A program made the position numbers and the translations under genes. Below, in pieces: positions 10,450-55,500 of a stretch of DNA of 64,000 nucleotides (the first letter of the stretch is position 1; every line of letters begins with the position of its first letter). The DNA comes from Camelus dromedarius (lineage: Eukaryota). The notes under the pieces are model-generated. The model saw only the letters and a program-made list of their open reading frames with translations, made no database searches and was not told the DNA's origin. Location: assembly GCF_036321535.1 (NCBI RefSeq), contig NC_087451.1, positions 47,306,001 to 47,370,000 of the forward strand, given 5' to 3'.

Positions 10450-11750
10450 GGGCACTGGGTGGGGCTGGGATGTCTGGGAATGTCAAAGCCTATTCTCTGA
10501 TCCTTGACCTGTGGCCCCCCTTCCTACGCAGGCCTTGCCCACCTCCGCACACTCCCGCGGGAGGTGTCGCTGCTGGGCTGAGTCGGGCGGACTCTCCCAC
10601 CGCGTGGAACACAGACGGAGCCGAGAGCCCCTTCCCACAGCCCTCACTGCCCCGGCGAAGGAGGGGCACGATGTCACCAACCCCAAACTGGGAGGGTCCG
10701 AAGCACGTGTGGGCCGCCTGTCCAGGACAGAGGGGAGCGGGCGGGGGCTGCTCCCATCACCCTCTCCAGTCCACAGCACAAAAGCGGCGGCTGCGAACAA
10801 AGAAGCGCTGCAAACTCGCCTGGGAGGCGGGACAGCCCGCGCCGCGCCCCCTCCCCACGCCGGGCGGGCGTGCCCGTCGGTGGGGTCCCGGCAGCGCCCC
10901 GACGGCGCTCTTACCTGGCCGGCGCAGACTTCTTTCTCCAGCTCGCGGTGGCGGTTGTGCCACACGAGGTAGTGCAAGGGATACTTCCCCTCTGGCCCCT
11001 TCCTGGCGGAGGCGTTGGCAGGGATCATCGCCCGCTCCTCATGCCGGGGCCGCGGCGCCCGGCCCGGGAGGAGGGACGGCGCCAGAGCCGGGGCCCGGGG
11101 CCGCGGGGCTGGGGGCCAGCGCTGCCTGCTCGCAGGGCTGCGGCTCGGGCATGTGCGAGCGGCGCCGGCGGGCGGGGGTGGCGCGCTCGGCGCGGTGCGG
11201 GTGGTGCGGGCGGTGCGGGCCGCGGGCGTCCTCGCGAGGCGGCGGCGGCGGGTGGCGCGGAGAGGCCCCCACCCGCCCGGGGAGGGCGCGGGCACTCGGC
11301 GGCGCGGCNNNNNNNNNNNNNNNNNNNNNNNNNNNNNNNNNNNNNNNNNNNNNNNNNNNNNNNNNNNNNNNNNNNNNNNNNNNNNNNNNNNNNNNNNNNN
11401 NNNNNNNNNNNNNNNNNNNNNNNNNNNNNNNNNNNNNNNNNNNNNNNNNNNNNNNNNNNNNNCGCAACTGCATAGCCCGGCCCTCAACACGAGCGGCCGG
11501 CGAGGGATGCGGGGATGCGGGGGAGAGGGGAGGGGGACGCGGGTGCCCGGGCAGAGCTGGTTATAACTCGGCCCCGCGGCATCATGGGGCTTGTAGTCTG
11601 CCTCGCGGAACTGGGGGTGGCGAGAGGACGGAGAGGGTCCCGCACTGTCCCCCGATCCATCGAGAGGGTAGGGAAAGAGTAAAGCCTGGCCAGAACGGAG
11701 GCAGTGTCCTGAGGCCAGGTGGATTAGGGCGCATCCCCTCCCGCTGGCAT
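10450..11750. promoter_or_regulatory. CpG island / ANKRD13B promoter and exon 1
   Basis: Very high GC and CpG density, GC boxes; contains N block 11309-11462. Confidence 0.9.
10915..11028 (-). CDS. ANKRD13B: ANKRD13B coding exon 1
   Basis: ATG at 11028; MIPANASARKGPEGKYPLHYLVWHNRHRELEKEVCAGQ (38 codons) then CAG|GTAAG donor; matches recalled mammalian ANKRD13B N-terminus. Confidence 0.96.
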
Positions 11751-12400: not shown

Positions 12401-14749
12401 ACCACTCACCTCCAAAATGAGACTCTAAATACTACTTCCTGGGGTAAGCTAAAGATAATGACTGCCCTGGAAATGGTGCATCCCTCCCCTGTCCAGGAGG
12501 ACTGGGACAGGTGGTAGGACCAGGCACAGTGCCTTCTTGAGCCCACCTTAGAACAAGACAGGAACAAGGAATTCCATACCAGCCCTACAATCCAAGAAGC
12601 GTTTGTGTGGGAGGTGCTAGCAAAAGCTTGCAAACTCTCCGCGCCTCTCTCAGGTTTCTTTGTGTGGTCTTCTTTCCTTCCTCCTCCACACCCATCGGTG
12701 CCAGGCCCGGGCGGGAAAGGCTGAGGGAGGAGTAGACTGCCTCGCCCCTTTCTCCAGGCTGGGAGGAGCTAGTTGGCGTCTCCAGGGTTGGGGACCGCTG
12801 CCCACCTCTACCACGAGGGGTCAGCAGAGTGTCGTGGCTGCAGCCGAAGTTGGGGAGGGGGCCGGAGCGGGGGAAGGACGGCTAGGAGTGGCCGGGAGAA
12901 TGCCTGTACATTTTTCATTAAATTGTTTTTAGAACCTTGTTGTGATTTCTTTTTAACTGTCCTGCTTCCTGAGGTGGCGAGGTCTCCAAAAGGAAATTCC
13001 GAAACCCTTTATCCCTAGCCCCAGACCCAGAAACTGATCTCCGTGGCGGGGCTGGGGGCTTCGGGAACAAAGTTTGGAGAATGGATCCGTGCTTGGGCCA
13101 CTCCCAGGTAGTCCCAGGGCCAACCAGGAGATGGGGCTAGTGGGATGCGGGGGGTGGGGGTGGGGGTGGACAGGGTGACTCATCCTTATTCCCCAGAAAA
13201 GGCTCTAGGAGGCGGGGAGGTCCTCCTGGAACGGGGGGCCTATACCCTGGGCAGCCGGAGCTTCTCTTTTTGCCAGGTGGCCCTGGACTCTAAACCTAGG
13301 TCGCTTTTTCTCCGGCCTGCGCGCTCCAGCTGCCACGTGCTCGAGACGCGCCCACACAGCAGAGAAACAAAGACAGCCAAGCAATGGGGCTGCCAGCACC
13401 CGCCTCGACATTTAATAAATGAAATTCCATAGCTGGGGGTCGATGGGGGGTGAACGGGCGGCCACCGTTCTTGGGCTGTGCGCCCGGTAAGGGCAGACAA
13501 GCCGCTCCTCCCATTGCCAGTGATGGGGCCACCAAGTCCCCGGTCTGACTCCTCGGTGGGGGTGCAGCACGGGGCGGCAGGTGGTTACCCCCACCCCTCT
13601 GTTCCCTGCGAGGTGTCTTTGCTCTTAGAGGCCCTGCCAGCTGAGCGGCTGGCTATGGGGGGAGGGGAGGCCTGCAAGATTTTTTTAAAGGTGCGATTAT
13701 AAATATATCCCATGGATCGCGATTTCAAACAAATTTGTCAATCTAGGGTGCAGCGAAAGGCGATGGAGGCAGCTTTGCATGTATTTCGGGTGGTGTGACT
13801 CATGAGCATTACTTGTCTCCCCCCAGGGAAGCAGCCTGCCCACCCACAAGTCACTGCTGCTCTGGCACCGCTGGGACAAAATCAACCAATTCCAGCACCC
13901 CTGTCCAAGGACTCCCCTCCTCTCTCCCCTTGTTACTGAGCAGGACTTCCTGCTGCCGGGGAGTCCTCCCCTAATCTGGGGAATCCTCCCTTAATCGTGT
14001 CACCACTGAGCTGCCCCCCCACCCCCCATCCCCGCCTGGTCCTAAGCACTCCCACCCTCTCCCCAGAGCAGAGCGCTCTGGCCTTTTGCTGCTGCAGGGA
14101 TGGGGGTTGGGTGCACGCGGGGCACACGTGTATGGGGGAGCATGCTCAGTGCAGGGGTGCACCCACGTGCGGCTTGCCCCTCCTCTCCCTGTCCCCCCTC
14201 CACTTCCAACCAGTCTCCACGTGAAGTCCAGGAAGAAAGGCCACGACAGAACCTGTCCATGTATGTTATATCCACATGCCCTGAACACACACACCCCTCT
14301 GGTGGCTCAGAAACACCGTTGATGCATACAAGACCGATGCCAAGTGGATATTACTGCACCCAGGCACAGTGGTCACTCCTCAGGAGGTCTTCAAAAACTG
14401 CCAAGATTCTTTCCTCTCTGAATGAAAGCATGGAGGAGGGATCGATGTATATTTAGCCTGGAGGCAGGGGGATACACTGCATGACCTCTTTGGCACTGGG
14501 CATCCATATTGTTGGCGGTGTGCGTAGTCAGCAAGAGTGTGACCAAACATACACCTGGACACACAGATGTGGACACATAGGGGACCAGGACGCACATCTC
14601 ACCCACACGGGGACGGGCGGGTACCCCTGAACCACAGCCCCTCAATGAGGAGGGGGGCCTGGGCCTCCAGCTCCTTACTCTCTTCTCTGATCTCCAGGGG
14701 TCACTGTCCCTGAGCCCGAGAGATCTCTGGGCCACCCTCCTCTCGAAAG

Positions 14750-15750
14750 AGGAGGGGATGGAGCTGTGAGGTTAACTCAAACCGTCTCGGGGCCAGGGGT
14801 GCGTCGGGGCCGAGGCCAGGGCCGCTGGCGGCGATGCCTGGTAAGGCCTGGCGATGGCCGTGGCCCCTTTAAGCACCCCCGCCCCCTCTCCCCCGCGCTC
14901 CCGGCTTCCTTTCTCCGGGAGGTGCGGCCGGCAGGGCCCGGCGGCGGGGCGGGTGTGTAGGCTGCCCCTCCCCCGGTGGGCCGGGCCTGCGTCGCTTCCT
15001 GCAGGAGCGGCCGGGAGCCGCGCAGGGGGCGGAGAGAGCGAGAGGCGAGCGGCGGCGGGGCGGAGGGCGCCCGAGGGCGAGCGGGCGGGCGGGCGGGCGG
15101 GCACGGCGGGTCCGGGCCANNNNNNNNNNNNNNNNNNNNNNNNNNNNNNNNNNNNNNNNNNNNNNNNNNNNNNNNNNNNNNNNNNNNNNNNNNNNNNNNN
15201 NNNNNNNNNNNNNNNNNNNNNNNNNNNNNNNNNNNNNNNNNNNNNNNNNNNNNNNNNNNNNNNNNNNNNNNNNNNNNNNNNNNNNNNNNNNNNNNNNNNN
15301 NNNNNNNNNNNNNNNNNNNNNNNNNNNNNNNNNNNNCGGGGGCGGGACCGCGCACGGAGGCACCGCCGGGCGGGCGCCGGGGCCTGGCGGGAGCGCCGTG
15401 CGGGGCCGGAGGGCGGGGCGGGGCTGGGGGCTGCGGCCTCCGGCCTCGGCCCCCGCCCGGACCACTGCGGAGTCGCGTCCTTGGCGGGAGGGCCGTCTGA
15501 GGGGCCCTCGTTTCCTCGCGTCCGTGGACGAGCGAGGAAGGACATTCCCGGCGCCGCCTCCCACCCCTCAGTCTGAGGGAGGCGGGCAGCTCTCTGCCTA
15601 CCCCCTCCATCTCAGTATCCAAACGGAAGCGCCAGCCTACGGTGGCAGGAGGGCTGTGGCGGAGGCCGGCCCGGTTTAGGAGGTGGGGGCGAGAGTGGTT
15701 TTGTGCCATCTCAGTGCCACCCCCGCGTCTTGCACCTGCTGCTTGCATGG
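14750..15750. promoter_or_regulatory. CpG island / GIT1 promoter, divergent from ANKRD13B
   Basis: High CpG density, GGGCGG boxes, GGGC repeat 15082-15101; contains N block 15120-15336. Confidence 0.9.
15120..15336 (+). other. GIT1: N block presumed to hide GIT1 coding exon 1 (MSRKGPRAEVCADCSAP)
   Basis: Exon 1 peptide not found elsewhere upstream of exon 2; block lies in the CpG island; exon 2 starts in phase 1 as expected. Content is inferred, not seen. Confidence 0.7.
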
Positions 15751-18109
15751 TCTGCCCGCCCGCTGGGGTGGCGGAGGGCAGGGGGCAGAGAACTGGGCAG
15801 ATGGGCCTGGGGACCTAGATACTGTTTCCTCAGGAGCAGATGAGGGGGTGGCTACTCCTAGGATTCCCTGCACCTTGTTCCCAAAGCTGGGGCTCCTCGC
15901 AGGGCCTGGTATTAAGGGCTAGTACGAGCCTGGGCATCTTCCCCTGAGGCATCCCTTGGCCTGGTGACTGGGAAAAACTAGACTCAGCTTTTCCTGTGTC
16001 CCAGTATGGCCTGCTTGGGAAGGTGGGCTTGGCATGCCTCAGCTTGGGCCCAGACCCCTCCTTGTCTTCTAGTCCAGTCTGGCCAGAAATGGGTAGGGAG
16101 CAGTGCTGAGGGGGGCCTAGATTCCCAGGATCCACCTGGCTTCCTGGCCTGCCTCCTGGCTGAATTTACCATGGTGTTTCCCTTCTCCTTCCCAGCAGAG
16201 TCAGGTCCAGGCTGATGTGAACCCCCCCCCCTGACCTGCTAAGGAAGTGAGGAGCAGTGACCTGGAGAGGCTGCTCCCTTCTGATGTGGGAGGACACTGC
16301 CAGTGATGGGGCTTAGCAACTGGCCTGGGGAAGGAAGCCCTGGCCCTTGTCCCTCCTGTCTTTAGGAAAGGAACTCTCTCTCTGGGAGACCTTTGGGAGG
16401 GCTCAAGGGGTCCGTGAACTCCAGGGGGACTGTAGGCACAATTAAGTGAGAGTGTAGGGTGGTGTTTTGTGGACCCATAACTTCCAGCCACCCTTTGGAC
16501 AGGTCCAGGACCCCAACAGGTGAGACCCACAGATACTCTAGTGGTTCCAGTAGCTCTGAGCTAGAGTGTGTGGGAACTCTGGGTGCCTGGCAGAGGCATG
16601 GTGGTCTGAGTGGTTATGACCCTGAGGCCTCCTTTCAGGGCATGTCATGGTCTAGAGGGCCCTAAAGAAGCTACTTCGGCAGGTGGAGGTGATATGTGTC
16701 CCACCCCTGATTAGTTAGAAACTAGTTATCTCCTTCCCCCAACCATAGGCAGGTCTGGGGATGGAAGGACTAAGAGGAAAACTTGCCTTCTATATGTCTG
16801 CTCCAGGCTGTTCTGCACCTTTGCTGGGTGGGCGTAGCAGTGGAGGGAGGGCAAGTCGGGATGGGAGGGGGGTGCTTAGCAGACACTTTATCAGGGGATT
16901 TTAAGTGTTGCCTTTGTTTCTAGCTTAGTCTGTGACTCATGGTAAGACTTTCCTCACTCTGGGTCCCAGTTTCCTCAACTCTGACGCAAAGAAGTTGGGA
17001 GTAGAAATGGTTTTTGAGGACCGTCCCATCTACAAGTCTGTGGTCCTGATTCTGGGCGAGGGGGACTTGGGGCAGAATTAGCAAGGCAGTTGACCTTTCT
17101 CCATTGCATCTGACTCTTTGGCTGAAGCCTCCAGATGCCCAGTGGGCATGGGGAGGAATGGTATGTATCTGATGTGTGAGCTGCCTAGCCCCTATCCCCA
17201 GTCCTCATCCCACAGAGGCATTTGTGCCCCAGGTACCTCCTTCCCCCTGATCCAGAATATGGGTTGGGAAGAGGCAGGTGGTGAGAAGGTGAGGTGGGTA
17301 GGGCGTTGACAAAGTCTAACTCTGCACCACGCCCCAGCACCTAGCATCGTGTCTGGCACATAGCAGGCACCCCCGCCAAGTGTGTATGGCTATTTATCAG
17401 GACCCCAGCTGGCTACTTTGGGCTACCCCGTACCCCTGCTCTATGAGGCATGGAATGGCAATCTCAGTCTAGGATCTGTAGCAACCCAGGTAAGAGGCTT
17501 GAGGGAAACCAGCAGTCTGGAGCCCAGGCCCAGAGCGACCTCCTTAGTGTATCCTCCTCACTGTGATAGGAGCCCTGTATTCCCAGCCCTAGGAGTGGGG
17601 TTGTGGCCTCTTTGTGGCTGGTTAATTTGTGAGCTCATGGAGGTGAGAGGCAAGAGGTGAGATGCAGTCTGACTTCAAAGGCCCCGTTCTCCCTCTGCTC
17701 CCAGGCCTTGGCACACAGGGGACAAGTGTGAGTACGTTGTGAGGCAGATGGACATGACATGGCTGCTCTGGCAACTGGTACCATCTCATCAGACACCATC
17801 TGTGTCCCTGCCTGCCTTGGGAATCCAGGAGAGGCGCAGGGGTCAGGGAACCCTGGAGAATGTGTGTTTCCCCCTTCCTGCCCCTCCATTCACCCCGTCA
17901 CACAGTCCTCGCCCAGCTCTCAGGGGTCTCCTCACACCGTGTGCCTCCTTCTCAGCCTTCCCACTTTGGCAGCCCCAGGCACAGGAGTGATGCCCATCCT
18001 GCAGGAACCCTGAGTGAGCAAGGCTGGCCATCAGCTAGGGACATTTAGGAACCTGCAGGCTCATTTGTCTCTGCATAATGTAGATTGTGAGGTGGGGTGA
18101 ACGGTGGGC

Positions 18110-18340: not shown

Positions 18341-18354
18341 TCCTTTCAAGAGGG

Positions 18355-18450
18355 TGGGCCTTTCTTGTCCAGTGAGGATCTTGTCCCTAGGTCAGAAGAG
18401 GCTGGGCCTCTCTTGTCCAGTGAGGATCTTGTCCCTAGGTCAGAAGAGGC
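18355..18450. repeat. 48-bp tandem duplication (2 copies, 47/48 identical)
   Basis: tgggcct(t/c)tcttgtccagtgaggatcttgtccctaggtcagaagaggc at 18355-18402 and 18403-18450. Confidence 0.95.
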
Positions 18451-20169
18451 TGGCTGCTGGCTGCTGGCCCTAGAGGCCACTAGTGGCTTTGGGTGGTGAC
18501 ATGAATTCACGTTCATATAGGCCTCCATGGTGCTGGCACTGGTTAACATTATCCCAGGACCCCTCCTGCCACTTGCCCACACATACCAGATCCCCTACCC
18601 TGACTGAGGCAGAAGCCTGGGGGTGGGTTGGCAGGAGACTGAGGAGGTGACTATATCCCCTAACCCTTATGTTCCCTGTCCCTTCTGCCCTGAGTTTGGT
18701 CCAAGGAGCCTTTTGGGGGCAAGGGTCCCTTAACCTCAAACCACAATAGCCATTTGACTTTCAGAAACCCTTCCTGGCCCTTCTGTGTAGGAACTGACCT
18801 ACATGGGACCTGGGGCTCCTGCTTGGGTAGGCCCAGGCCCCTTGGGCATAGAGAGCCCATAGGTTAGGGTGGGCTTCCCACCTGTGTCATCCAGAACTGA
18901 GCTGGCACCAGTGTGCCCCACCAGGACAATGTCCCCTGCCCATCCTTCCTATTTCAGGTCGCTGTGGAAGAGAGGGAGGACCCCTCTTCCAAGCTGGGAG
19001 AGTGCCGAGCAGAACCTTTGACTACACTCCCCAGATCCTGGTCTCTTGGTCACTGCCACCTTCAGGGACTTATTGTGTCTGGTCTGGCCCTGGATGTCTG
19101 GCCAGATCTGTCGTCCCAGGCCTGGCTTCTCTGTTAGAGCCACAGGCCTGGGGTGGAGGCCTCAGGGCGGCCCATTTGTGATCCTGGCCTGGGCGGCTCC
19201 CTACTGACAGGAAACCCCACCATTTCAACAAGAGGAATTTAGGCCACGTCATTTCCAGCTTCCTGCCTGGGCTGCCAGGAGGTGGCTGACAGGCAGACCC
19301 CTGACCCAGTGGTGTTTGGGAGTGGGGGGAGTGAGTTTTCCATGCCTGGGGTGCCTTACTGTCTGGGGAAAGTCAGCACTAAAGTTTGCTCTAGGGCTCC
19401 CTCTCTTGGCACAGGTGGTGGGTCCCTTCCTCACGGGCCCCTAGAATCACCCCCAGAAAGGTGTATGGGGGGTACCATGTACATCCCTCTGTTGCCCTGT
19501 TTTGGGGGATCCCTAAGGAAGCCCAGACCTTAAGAGCTGAGCCCCCCTTTCACTTCCTGTTTCCACACCATTGGAGGGGACATTTGACATGGGCAGCGTT
19601 GAAGCCGTGTCCTGACTCAATCTCTTCATGAATCTCTGGGGAACTTTGATGGAAGTCCTTGCGGGGAAGGGTCTCGGAAATGCCTTATGGTTGGAGGGGC
19701 TCTCATTATCCTAAGCCTGTCCCTCCCTGGAGGGGGCACTTCTGGACTCCTTGAGCATTATGGAGCAAGGCAGAGAGCCGGCCCACTCCCACCTCACCCC
19801 AGGACAGGGCTTCCTGAGATGGGGCGGGGGCCTGGGCAGAGCACAGTGTCCTGGGAGAGAGGCTCCCTGCCCCCACACTCCAGCGACACACAATGGCTGC
19901 TTTCTCCCCCGTGACCTTTCCGCAGCCTGAGCTGTGTGCAGCTGTCTCCTCCCTCTCTCCCAAGGGGCCTGGGATGGGTAGCATCTCCCCTGCCCTTGAG
20001 AAGGACCCCAGAAGCTCCCCTCCTACTCTGGCACCCCTTCTTGCTTCTAAAGCTCACTTTTCCCCAAGGAGTGGAGAGTGGCTTCCAGGGCCCTCACCCA
20101 CTTGGGGGTGCCCCCTTTGGAGCTGCAACAGCAGCAGGTGTGGACAAGGCATGGTCTCCAGCATCTTAA

Positions 20170-20978: not shown

Positions 20979-21112
20979 ACCCCGGCTGGGCCTCCATCAG
21001 CAGGGGTGTGCTGGTGTGCGACGAGTGCTGCAGTGTGCACCGGAGCCTGGGACGCCATATCTCCATTGTCAAGCACCTCCGCCACAGCGCCTGGCCCCCC
21101 ACCCTGCTGCAG
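20979..21112 (+). CDS. GIT1: GIT1 coding exon 2 (ArfGAP, second CxxC and Arg finger)
   Basis: (D)PGWASISRGVLVCDECCSVHRSLGRHISIVKHLRHSAWPPTLLQ; CAG/GTATG. Confidence 0.97.
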
Positions 21113-52500: not shown

Positions 52501-55500
52501 CATTTTTTAAATGCTAACTTTAAAAAAGGGAGAAAGGGAGAGAGAGTGAACACAAGAAACTTTACTGCCAAGCTCTGGATACCAGACATAGCATTTACGA
52601 CTTTCTGACATGCCGGACAAATTTCCCATACTTTTATTTTCTTAAACACATATATATCAAGTGAACACCAACACTGGGGGGAGGTAGAAGTAATTTGATC
52701 AAATGTTGACATCTGTACACTGATTCAGAAGTGCCTGCTTCCTTCTTTAGAATCTCTCAAAACATTTCAAATTTTCCTGCTACAAGCTTTACTCTTTGAT
52801 GATTCCTACCATGTGTGAGATTCCTCAGAAGTCAGATCTTGCAAACACACACAAACCAATTAATTTGAACCATTTTTGCAAACTATACATATTTTAATTA
52901 AAATTAAATTAATGGGATAGTCCAGGTATAGTCATGACCTACATGTAAAACTGGTTGCCACACAATCAGATACAAAGCCCTACTGGATAGACATGTGGAG
53001 TCAGTATTCAATCACAATTTTGCAAGTACATATGATCTGCATGAACTCAGTAACTCAATTTGACTAATTTAAGTCCACGAGTGGACTTTAACATGTATCA
53101 CTGGTAGTATTTTTTTTAAAGAGTTTTGAATGTAAAACTGATCTGCACTCCTATTCCACCCCTCCAACAGTACAGAGGGGCTAGATCCAAAAAGAATTTT
53201 TAGAAGGTATCAATTCATATTTTTGGACATTTTATTAATTCTAAAGTTCTTTCCTATCATTTTCCTCCAAATAGGTAGATATCTCAATATGTCTGAAATA
53301 CTATATAATAAATACGTGAATGCAAAAAATATACTGAGAAAATTTAAAAATCCCCTTTCATTAGATAGACAAGTAAGTACGTATCATGCTCACCTAAAAA
53401 CTGGTGATCTCGAGCATGGCCAACAGAACACTGTACCAGAGTGCTACAAAACCCTGACTAAAATTGTGTGTGAATTCTACTGCGAACTTGATTTTAAAAA
53501 GACTTACATTAAAATATTAATTTTTCTTCTAGTTACCTTTAAATGAATGTCAGAAACTCCTAAAGGGGGGGACTCACGGGGATTAGACTGACATACCTGG
53601 GGAAGACTTAAATTTGGTTGAGAAAATCAGGATTTCAACAGTGACAGATTACTGTTTGGTCATTAATCTGGTCTAATTAAAGAGTATCACTGAGAGGGAC
53701 TTAAGAGAATTCTACCTTGGAGCCCTCTGACTATATGAAAAAAGCAGGATCCAGAGTTAGCAGCAAGGGTTCTTCAAGACACCTGGGGAGGGGGCAGGAC
53801 AATAACTTGTAAGAAACTCTCATCTGTCACTGAAAAGAACAATTTTTTCCTTCGAGTCATACTCACATCTTCCTACCCACCCCACCTTCAACTCAATTTC
53901 CACATTAGCAGTGGAATACCAAGTAACATCTAACTTTCAGCATTGGGTTGATCCTTCATTATAAAACAAAACAAAACAAAACAAAACAAAACAAAACAAA
54001 ACAAAACATATCCCTCTGTGGAAAAAAAAAAGTTAGCTTTTGTCAAGAGATTCCCTGACCACTATAACTTATTATTTTTTTAAATTTGCCAAACTTGCTA
54101 GTTCTTTTTCAGTAGTACTTTAGCACTGAGGCTAGAGACTTCCGGAAGTGGTGTTTCCTATTGTGTGATGTTAACATGATGCCAAATGGTCACTAAGTCT
54201 CAAGGAACTAGAAGTTTGCAAAGTATTGCAGCAACAAAAACAGCAATTAAAAGGAAAAAAAAAAAAAAAAAGAGGACCTGCATGTGCAGCAAAATCTACA
54301 GTGGTGATGAGGATTAGTCAGCAGCTGGTAAGTCATTGGCTCAGTGACTCCTGGTTCACTATGGCAACTAAACATTAAATAATTGGCTATTCTACTTGTA
54401 AACAGGAAATCCCGTAAGCCAAAAGAGGGTAATCAAATTATGTTTATGTAGTGTGGTGAGAATTCCAATAGACGGCAGTTTGCAAATATGGCATCATTCA
54501 AATACCTCTGGCATTTGATTTATATTGGCTATGTGTCTTTGTTCTTATACAAAGTAAAAGTACTGTTTGGGGTCTTGGGAGTTATAGAGCTTAGCTAGGA
54601 TGAGATATCACAGTATAAGCAACAAAACGTCAGGATATATAGGGTTCATGTCCTCACTCTGCTGCTGAACATACCCACCATATGAACTTTCAGGGGCCTC
54701 TCTCACCCTTCCGGTCTTCCCCTTTAAAGGCTCACAGGTTCGTTGATGCAATTCCCACACAACTTGTGATCTCCTTAAGCACCTCCATCTCACCATGCCA
54801 TAAAGAAGGCACAATTGAATAGACCAAAAAAAAAAAAAAAAAAAAAAATTCACTGACAGATCTATGCAGCATTCAGAAAAAGAATTAAGTTGTTTTCTAC
54901 TCTCTGAAAAAGTCAATGCAACCCTTTAGTGTTTGTGGATTTCTGTGTTCTTTTTTACTCCAAATGAGGCTGAGAAGTCAGACCAATTTAATAAAGAAAG
55001 TACACTGGTAAGGGGATACAGATGTGTTTCCATAGCAACTTGTTTCAGTATATGCTGCCTGCTATGAGTGGCTTATAAGAATCTGGGGTATGGAGAAAGG
55101 CTTTAGATCTCTTCACAAACTTCTTAGGATCTAATTGTCCAACAGTGATGACTCAAGTCACATCACTGCATTCTATTTTTGCAGTGTTCAGAAAATACCC
55201 CCTCTCTAGCCAATTTCTTTTAGCTATGCACGATATGTATGTGTGTGTGTGTATATGTATACACACATACATATCAAATCCCATTTTCAAAATTTCTCCA
55301 AAAGTTAAAAACAAAAAAACAAAAAACAAAACCCGGCAGCCAAATACTATGACATCCCAGTTAGTAAACACANNNNNNNNNNNNNNNNNNNNNNNNNNNN
55401 NNNNNNNNNNNNNNNNNNNNNNNNNNNNNNNNNNNNNNNNNNNNNNNNNNNNNNNNNNNNNNNNNNNNNNNNNNNNNNNNNNNNNNNNNNNNNNNNNNNN

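What the first reader, a model, noticed from the sequence alone, without database searches (positions are those of the whole stretch)
14770..14846. Candidate upstream GIT1 first exon encoding a zinc-finger-less, probably GAP-dead isoform
Seen: ggcggcgATG CCT G|GTAAGG; ATG at 14834 with G at -3, donor at 14841 matching 7/9 consensus, about 280 nt upstream of the block that hides canonical exon 1. It ends in phase 1, as exon 2 (20979, AC...) requires, giving MP-DPGWASISRGVLVCDECC... in frame. A 3-codon uORF (14758-14769) lies just upstream. Knowledge: the ArfGAP C4 zinc finger needs the first CxxC (CADC), encoded in canonical exon 1. Inference: promoter choice could yield a GIT1 that keeps ankyrin, SHD/PIX, coiled-coil and paxillin-binding modules but lacks Arf GAP activity, i.e. 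a pure scaffold or dominant-negative. I cannot confirm whether it is already annotated.
Basis: partly seen in the sequence, partly recalled or inferred. Interest (0 to 1): 0.7.

Follow-up and report, generated by a model that had tools for sequence, protein, structure and literature searches.

The report
Doubtful upstream GIT1 first exon
The ATG and splice-donor motif upstream of camel GIT1 are really there and the area is transcribed, but nothing shows it makes a zinc-finger-less GIT1. The one database protein with that start comes from a gene model built over an assembly gap.

Summary
The arrangement is only mildly unusual. Shuffles give 5-9% per 1-2 kb at the same donor strength and 21-37% at 8 bits or more.

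The predicted N-terminus MPDPGWASISRG is already in GenBank as EQB78266.1, a Camelus ferus model. In that assembly a 1,158-N gap replaces the CpG island and canonical exon 1, so the model was built without sight of exon 1. Models from other species that lack canonical exon 1 each start at a different small first exon.

Camel RNA runs hold this single-copy stretch. Four runs read straight on past the donor. Five others hold upstream words but almost none just after it. That second pattern fits donor use, but the strand and the acceptor partner are unknown.

A ruminant-like model suggests the donor is not conserved.

Verdict: most likely a 5' leader or upstream non-coding exon with an upstream ATG. 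I give the GAP-dead isoform about 0.2.

The parts
14671..14697 (+). Polypyrimidine tract followed by AG (14696-97): a strong 3' splice acceptor-like site
   Evidence: One search gives the sequence. The crude acceptor score is 13.6, which ranks in the top 2 of 4654 AG sites on the + strand of the window. The ruminant-like ab initio model P0153 starts an exon at the orthologous point.
14698..14840 (+). It holds the uORF and the ATG. Use as an exon is not shown.
   Evidence: Only 4 pairs with acceptor >=13 and donor >=9.5, spaced 50-300 nt, occur on both strands of the 64 kb. Of the other three, one has a real ANKRD13B acceptor, one is an open probable exon and one looks like a pseudo-exon. RNA runs hold words in 14500-14810, and that stretch is single copy in the genome.
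14758..14769 (+). 3-codon uORF (Met-Glu-Leu-stop)
14834..14840 (+).
   Evidence: It equals the gene start of the C. ferus model EQB78266.1 (L001:3001).
14841..14846 (+). Donor-like GTAAGG
   Evidence: 9.58 bits; sites this strong occur about once per 2.3 kb on the + strand. An identical 9-mer is also at 55008.
14834..14872 (+). 12-codon ORF (MPGKAWRWPWPL-stop) read from the same ATG if the donor is not used
   Evidence: RNA run X5 holds 14 of 14 words of 14811-14992, which is unspliced sequence.
14800..15700 (.). CpG island of the GIT1 promoter. The candidate sits on its 5' edge.
   Evidence: GC 0.77-0.89 and CpG observed/expected 0.76-1.15.
15120..15336 (+). Masked N block that should hide canonical exon 1. 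It was not filled or looked up.
   Evidence: Orthologous proteins start MSRKGPRAEVCADCSAP before DPGW.
20979..21112 (+). GIT1 exon 2, holding the second CxxC and the arginine finger of the ArfGAP domain

Best explanation
The stretch is part of the transcribed 5' leader region of camel GIT1. I read it as a non-coding upstream exon-like unit (14698-14840, or a start site somewhat upstream, up to 14840) at the edge of the promoter CpG island, and not as a coding first exon.

The ATG at 14834 would then be an upstream ATG. In transcripts that read through the donor it opens a 12-codon uORF. If the donor is used, the nearest competent acceptor is the site with exon start 15005. That would make a 164-nt 5'UTR intron and leave the canonical start codon and zinc finger in the mRNA.

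The protein starting MPDPGW that exists in GenBank reflects gene finding across an assembly gap and is not a transcript.

Shown: the letters, the splice-signal strengths, RNA-run word shares, single-copy status, and the gap in the C. ferus assembly. Inferred: the strand of the RNA, any use of the donor, and its partner.
For: -: all 14 sampled words of 14811-14992 either span the donor or lie just 3' of it. RNA runs X5, X3, X1 and X2 hold 14, 11, 9 and 9 of them. If sampling is random, the chance that none of the 14 spans the donor is about 0.04. The assembled form in these runs is therefore unspliced at 14840.
- X6, X7, X8 and X9 hold 22, 20, 19 and 17 of the 56 words of 14500-15119. None was listed, so each holds under a twentieth of those 14 words, taken here as none. 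X4 holds 30 of 56 but 2 of 14. At most about 12 words start at 14963-15089, so these runs hold RNA in 14500-14840 that stops at or before about 14850. That fits a splice at 14840 into either 15005 or exon 2.
- the best acceptor between the donor and the N block has exon start 15005 and scores 8.2. Exon 2's acceptor scores 6.0.
- EQB78266.1 starts MPDPGW, its gene start equals window 14834, and its assembly has 1,158 N over window 14859-15518.
- five other models that lack canonical exon 1 (hamster, deer, macaque, pangolin, sperm whale) each use a different small first exon.
- the chance of such a pair is 5-37% per 1-2 kb.
- no paper describes an upstream GIT1 first exon.
Against: - The strand of the RNA is unknown, because contigs carry no strand.
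- No read-level junction was seen for any model.
- The donor is strong (9.58 bits) and would be close to the cap, which favours its use. Exon 2 is the gene's proven acceptor.
- The splice matrices are approximations written from memory.
- Part of the missing words could reflect poor coverage of the 78% GC stretch.
Confidence: 0.5

Rival explanations
1. Transcripts start upstream of 14834, or enter through the acceptor at 14698. They splice 14840>20979, skip canonical exon 1 and encode MP-DPGW..., a GIT1 without the first CxxC. Such a protein would probably be GAP-dead and act as a scaffold only.
For: - The join is in frame and in phase 1.
- The donor is strong and an acceptor lies upstream.
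- RNA words lie upstream of the donor, and five runs hold almost none just after it.
- Exon 2 is the next proven acceptor.
- No PAS hexamer lies on the + strand in 13600-14992 that could otherwise end a + strand RNA there.
Against: - No junction has been observed.
- Four RNA runs read through the donor.
- A nearer and stronger acceptor exists at 15005.
- The Kozak context is only adequate (G at -3, C at +4).
- uORFs lie at 14645 and 14758.
- The GTAAG is absent from the orthologous stretch of a ruminant-like model.
- The only deposited instance comes from a gene model built over an assembly gap.
- A domain missing two of its four zinc ligands may simply misfold and be degraded. This last point is an inference from PMC2542466.
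Confidence: 0.2
2. Chance motifs in promoter-upstream DNA. The RNA seen in the runs would be upstream antisense or other unstable promoter-associated transcription, or a minus-strand exon, so the + strand ATG, donor and acceptor have no role.
For: - The strand is unknown.
- Divergent transcription from CpG-island promoters is common (general knowledge).
- Decoy donors of 9 bits or more are frequent: six lie in intron 1.
- Minus-strand acceptor-like sites lie at 14741, 14457 and 14417.
- Shuffles give 5-37%.
Against: - The acceptor/donor pair is as strong as only three other pairs in 128 kb of both strands.
- An antisense start within a CpG island would be expected to include 14811-14900, yet the runs that lack those words still hold the upstream words.
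- Runs of only 0.18-1 Gb assemble the stretch, which argues for a fairly abundant RNA. This is an inference.
Confidence: 0.25

Closest known systems
GenBank EQB78266.1, 'ARF GTPase-activating protein GIT1 [Camelus ferus]' (879 aa)
   Same: Its gene start maps to window 14834.
   Different: It is an automated model on an assembly where 1,158 N replace the CpG island and exon 1. It also carries intron-like insertions, making it 879 aa against 761 or 770. It is not transcript evidence.
Sperm whale GIT1 isoforms X1/X2 (XP_028342655.1, XP_028342650.1)
   Same: These are annotated models with an alternative first exon joined in phase 1 to exon 2. They also lack the first CxxC (MEWHFQSGTCSSP-DPGW).
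   Different: Their exon maps to camel intron 1 at 17450-17489, not to 14834. Whether RNA supports it or the annotator filled in a missing 5' end is unknown.
ArfGAP domain (PF01412), motif CX2CX16CX2CX4R
   Same: Exon 2 encodes the second CX2C and the arginine.
   Different: The proposed product lacks the first CX2C, so it fails the defining motif (PMC2542466). It would not be an ArfGAP in the catalytic sense.
Upstream ATGs, uORFs and 5'UTR introns in CpG-island promoters (general knowledge)
   Same: Short ORFs at 14645, 14758 and 14834 lie in sequence that RNA runs hold. A 164-nt intron 14841-15004 is possible by its signals.
   Different: Neither the leader's strand nor the intron has been seen in reads.
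Laboratory GAP-dead or ArfGAP-deleted GIT1 constructs, and the many GIT2 splice forms (own knowledge, not checked here)
   Different: Those are engineered constructs or internal splice variants. No natural GIT1 isoform from an upstream exon was found in the papers searched.

Membership tests
Protein-coding alternative first exon of GIT1 | ATG in frame with exon 2 through a donor in the right phase | tested here: met
   ATG CCT G | GT, and G+AC gives Asp, then PGWASISRG.
Protein-coding alternative first exon of GIT1 | + strand transcription starting upstream of 14834 | tested here: inconclusive
   RNA runs hold words of 14500-14810 and the stretch is single copy, but contigs give no strand or start.
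Protein-coding alternative first exon of GIT1 | Junction 14840>20979 in RNA | not testable with these tools
The span also exceeds the 6,000-letter limit.
Protein-coding alternative first exon of GIT1 | ATG and GT conserved beyond the genus | tested here: inconclusive
   Both are present in C. ferus, which is 99.6% identical here and so uninformative. In the ruminant-like model P0153, CALGP stands where camel has CLVRP, so no GTAAG fits that frame. That is one protein-level comparison from a species the source does not name.
ArfGAP domain (PF01412) | Complete C4 zinc finger CX2CX16CX2CX4R | tested here: not met
   The proposed product starts MPDPGW and keeps only CDEC...R from exon 2. The first CADC is in the 17 residues before DPGW in orthologs. 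The motif is from PMC2542466.
Internal spliced exon | Acceptor and donor signals at both ends | tested here: met
   Acceptor 13.6 (top 2 of 4654) and donor 9.58, with a 143-nt spacing. The matrices are approximate.
Internal spliced exon | Both splice sites used in RNA | not testable with these tools
   There is only indirect word-share arithmetic.
uORF in a 5' leader | ATG and in-frame stop inside transcribed leader sequence | tested here: inconclusive
   The ORF at 14834-14872 exists and X5 holds 14 of 14 words of 14811-14992, but the strand is not known.

The most novel reading that the evidence does not exclude
Camels, and perhaps other cetartiodactyls, make zinc-finger-less GIT1 proteins from alternative 5' exons. 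The exons would be 14698-14840 and/or the whale-annotated exon at 17450-17489, and both join exon 2 in phase 1. The result would be a natural GAP-dead scaffold form of GIT1 set by promoter or splice-site choice.
Probability: 0.12. Interest if true: 0.5.

Novelty: new member of a known kind. Interest (0 to 1): 0.22.

Why it matters
A natural GIT1 lacking GAP activity but keeping its PIX- and paxillin-binding modules would separate GIT1's scaffold role from its catalytic role in vivo. That would interest people working on focal adhesions and synapses.

As it stands, the main lesson is a caution. When canonical exon 1 is hidden by a mask here, or by an assembly gap in C. ferus, both a human-like reader and a gene finder settle on the same 7-nt "first exon". 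The product then enters databases as a GIT1 protein.

The strong exon-like unit at 14698-14840 and the RNA-run pattern make a small, testable question for camel transcript annotation.

Tried and rejected
- **Read laying.** There is no read-level test. The only later use of that place was a local splice score that returned numbers only.
- **The look-up of encoding contigs with the minus-strand ORF 14391-14735.** Nothing on record.
- **The search for homologous proteins with exon 2 alone.** It returned two irrelevant short ORFs.
- **The search for homologous proteins with the open frame 14691-14957.** No hits, so no multi-species comparison by that route.
- **The search of protein representatives.** The top hits were genomic ORFs across exon 2 and fragmentary models. 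None starts MPD.
- **Papers.** No upstream GIT1 first exon or natural ArfGAP-less GIT1 isoform is described.
- **Rfam and repeat search.** No known RNA family or repeat explains the RNA cover. The genome search shows 14500-14810 is single copy.
- **Bacterial promoter/terminator scan.** Not relevant to a mammal.
- **ANKRD13B overlap.** I considered that 14770-14846 lies in ANKRD13B and rejected it. That gene's ATG is at 11028 on the minus strand, about 3.8 kb away.

Full report
**The observation.** One search shows ATG at 14834-36 (G at -3, C at +4), then CCT, then G at 14840, followed by GTAAGG at 14841-46. This lies 280 nt before the N block 15120-15336. The three-codon uORF is at 14758-69. 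Exon 2 begins at 20979 after an AG and ends at 21112. It hits Pfam ArfGap at E 1.9e-12.

**Setting.** The site lies on the 5' edge of the promoter CpG island, about 14800-15700. The neighbour ANKRD13B is head to head on the minus strand, with its ATG at 11028. The stretch is therefore not part of that gene. The genome is a Camelus: the locus is 99.3-99.8% identical to C. ferus scaffold KB017029.1.

**Chance.** I scored donors with an approximate matrix written from memory.
- The candidate scores 9.58 bits.
- Twenty-eight + strand sites in the window reach that score, and six sites of 9 bits or more lie in intron 1 alone.
- Dinucleotide shuffles of the 1-2 kb before the N block give an open, phase-1 ATG-donor pair in 5-9% of cases at the candidate's own score. 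At 8 bits or more the figure is 21-37%.

This is mildly unusual at best, and the threshold was chosen after seeing the candidate.

**Is it already annotated?** Yes, in one sense. A search with a GIT1 protein returned P0175, which is GenBank EQB78266.1, GIT1 of Camelus ferus. Its sequence starts MPDPGWASISRG. Its gene start, L001:3001, aligns to window 14834. In that assembly a run of 1,158 N covers window 14859-15518, which is the whole CpG island and canonical exon 1. The model also carries intron-like insertions, making it 879 aa.

So the gene finder had no view of exon 1 and took the nearest in-phase ATG-GT. The first-stage reader was in the same position because of the mask. Models from other species that lack canonical exon 1 each start at a different small first exon:
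- hamster: M|DPGW
- deer: MGQT|DPGW
- macaque: MDSGDCMSQR|DPGW
- pangolin: a 46-residue start before DPGW
- sperm whale: MEWHFQSGTCSSP|DPGW

This shows how easily such exons are found.

A polypyrimidine tract at 14671-14695 with AG at 14696-97 scores 13.6 on a crude acceptor matrix. That ranks in the top 2 of 4654 AG sites on the + strand. Together with the donor it bounds a 143-nt exon-like unit, 14698-14840.

Only four acceptor/donor pairs this strong occur on both strands of the window. Of the other three, one has a real ANKRD13B acceptor, one is an open probable exon and one looks like a pseudo-exon. If the unit is used, it may be an internal exon and not a first exon.

**RNA evidence.** What remains is the share of sampled 31-letter words held by RNA runs.

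| Runs | Words held of 56 (14500-15119) | Words held of 14 (14811-14992) |
|---|---|---|
| X1, X2, X3, X5 | 38, 36, 36, 26 | 9, 9, 11, 14 |
| X6, X7, X8, X9 | 22, 20, 19, 17 | not listed (taken as 0) |
| X4 | 30 | 2 |

Every one of the 14 words in 14811-14992 either spans the donor or lies just after it.
- The first group carries the unspliced genomic sequence past the donor.
- In the second and third groups, at most about 12 words can start at 14963-15089. These runs must therefore hold RNA within 14500-14840 that stops at or before about 14850.
- The stretch 14500-14810 is single copy.
- No Rfam family or repeat explains the cover.
- No PAS hexamer lies on the + strand.

The second pattern is what a splice at 14840 would give. 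It does not say which acceptor is used. Exon 2 fits, and so does an acceptor-like site with exon start 15005, which scores 8.2 against 6.0 for exon 2. The strand is also unknown, and part of the drop could be poor coverage of the 78% GC stretch.

**Conservation.** Only one indirect comparison was possible. The ab initio model P0153 is ruminant-like by its sequence, and its source names no species. It translates through the orthologous stretch, giving RRRRCALGPGGGGGPFK where camel has RWRRCLVRPGDGRGPFK (window 14742-14903, E 1.5e-8). No GTAAG can be encoded there in that frame, so the donor seems absent in that species.

[quoted passage not shown] Orthologs carry the first CX2C in the 17 residues before DPGW.

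**Verdict.**

| Reading | Probability |
|---|---|
| Transcribed 5' leader or upstream non-coding exon; the ATG is an upstream ATG (a 12-codon uORF when unspliced) | about 0.5 |
| Chance motifs with antisense or promoter-associated RNA | about 0.25 |

Noticed in passing
window 17450-17489 (+), donor GT at 17490: A second in-phase mini first exon lies in GIT1 intron 1. It reads ATG...(MEWQSQSRICSNP)+G | GTAAGA. The donor scores 11.2 bits and the Kozak context is good (G at -3, G at +4). It is the ortholog of the first exon of sperm whale GIT1 isoforms X1/X2 (MEWHFQSGTCSSP-DPGW) and would likewise give a GIT1 without the first CxxC. RNA support is unknown in both species.
   Followed up: partly
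window 14854 onward (+), frame open to the N block at 15120: The ATG at 14854 (G at -3, G at +4) opens a frame with no stop up to the masked block, and the ORF listing carries it through to 15576. If transcripts start upstream, this is either an N-terminal extension of GIT1 or a uORF overlapping its start. The frame relation to the canonical ATG is hidden by the mask and was not looked up.
   Followed up: no
L001:3026-4183 (C. ferus KB017029.1), equal to window ~14859-15518: The C. ferus assembly GCA_000311805.2 has a 1,158-N gap over the GIT1 CpG island and exon 1. Its deposited GIT1 protein EQB78266.1 is therefore wrong at the N-terminus, and it also contains intron-like inserts.
   Followed up: yes
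window 11507-11631 and 12705-12907 (+): The ruminant-like ab initio model P0153 strings + strand pieces of the ANKRD13B-GIT1 intergenic region into an N-terminal extension (51-60% identity to camel translations). The intergenic DNA is therefore alignable across artiodactyls. A + strand divergent transcript from the ANKRD13B CpG island could feed the acceptor at 14698. That idea is speculative.
   Followed up: no
window 10915-11028 (-), N block 11309-11462: ANKRD13B exon 1 coding part (MIPANASARKGPEGKYPLHYLVWHNRHRELEKEV...) has its donor after 10915. The masked block just upstream probably hides its 5'UTR or promoter.
   Followed up: partly
window 18348-18453 (+), GIT1 intron 1: BLAST cross-matches between the camel genomes show a short tandem duplication in intron 1. 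Two 58-nt matches lie offset by 48 nt.
   Followed up: no
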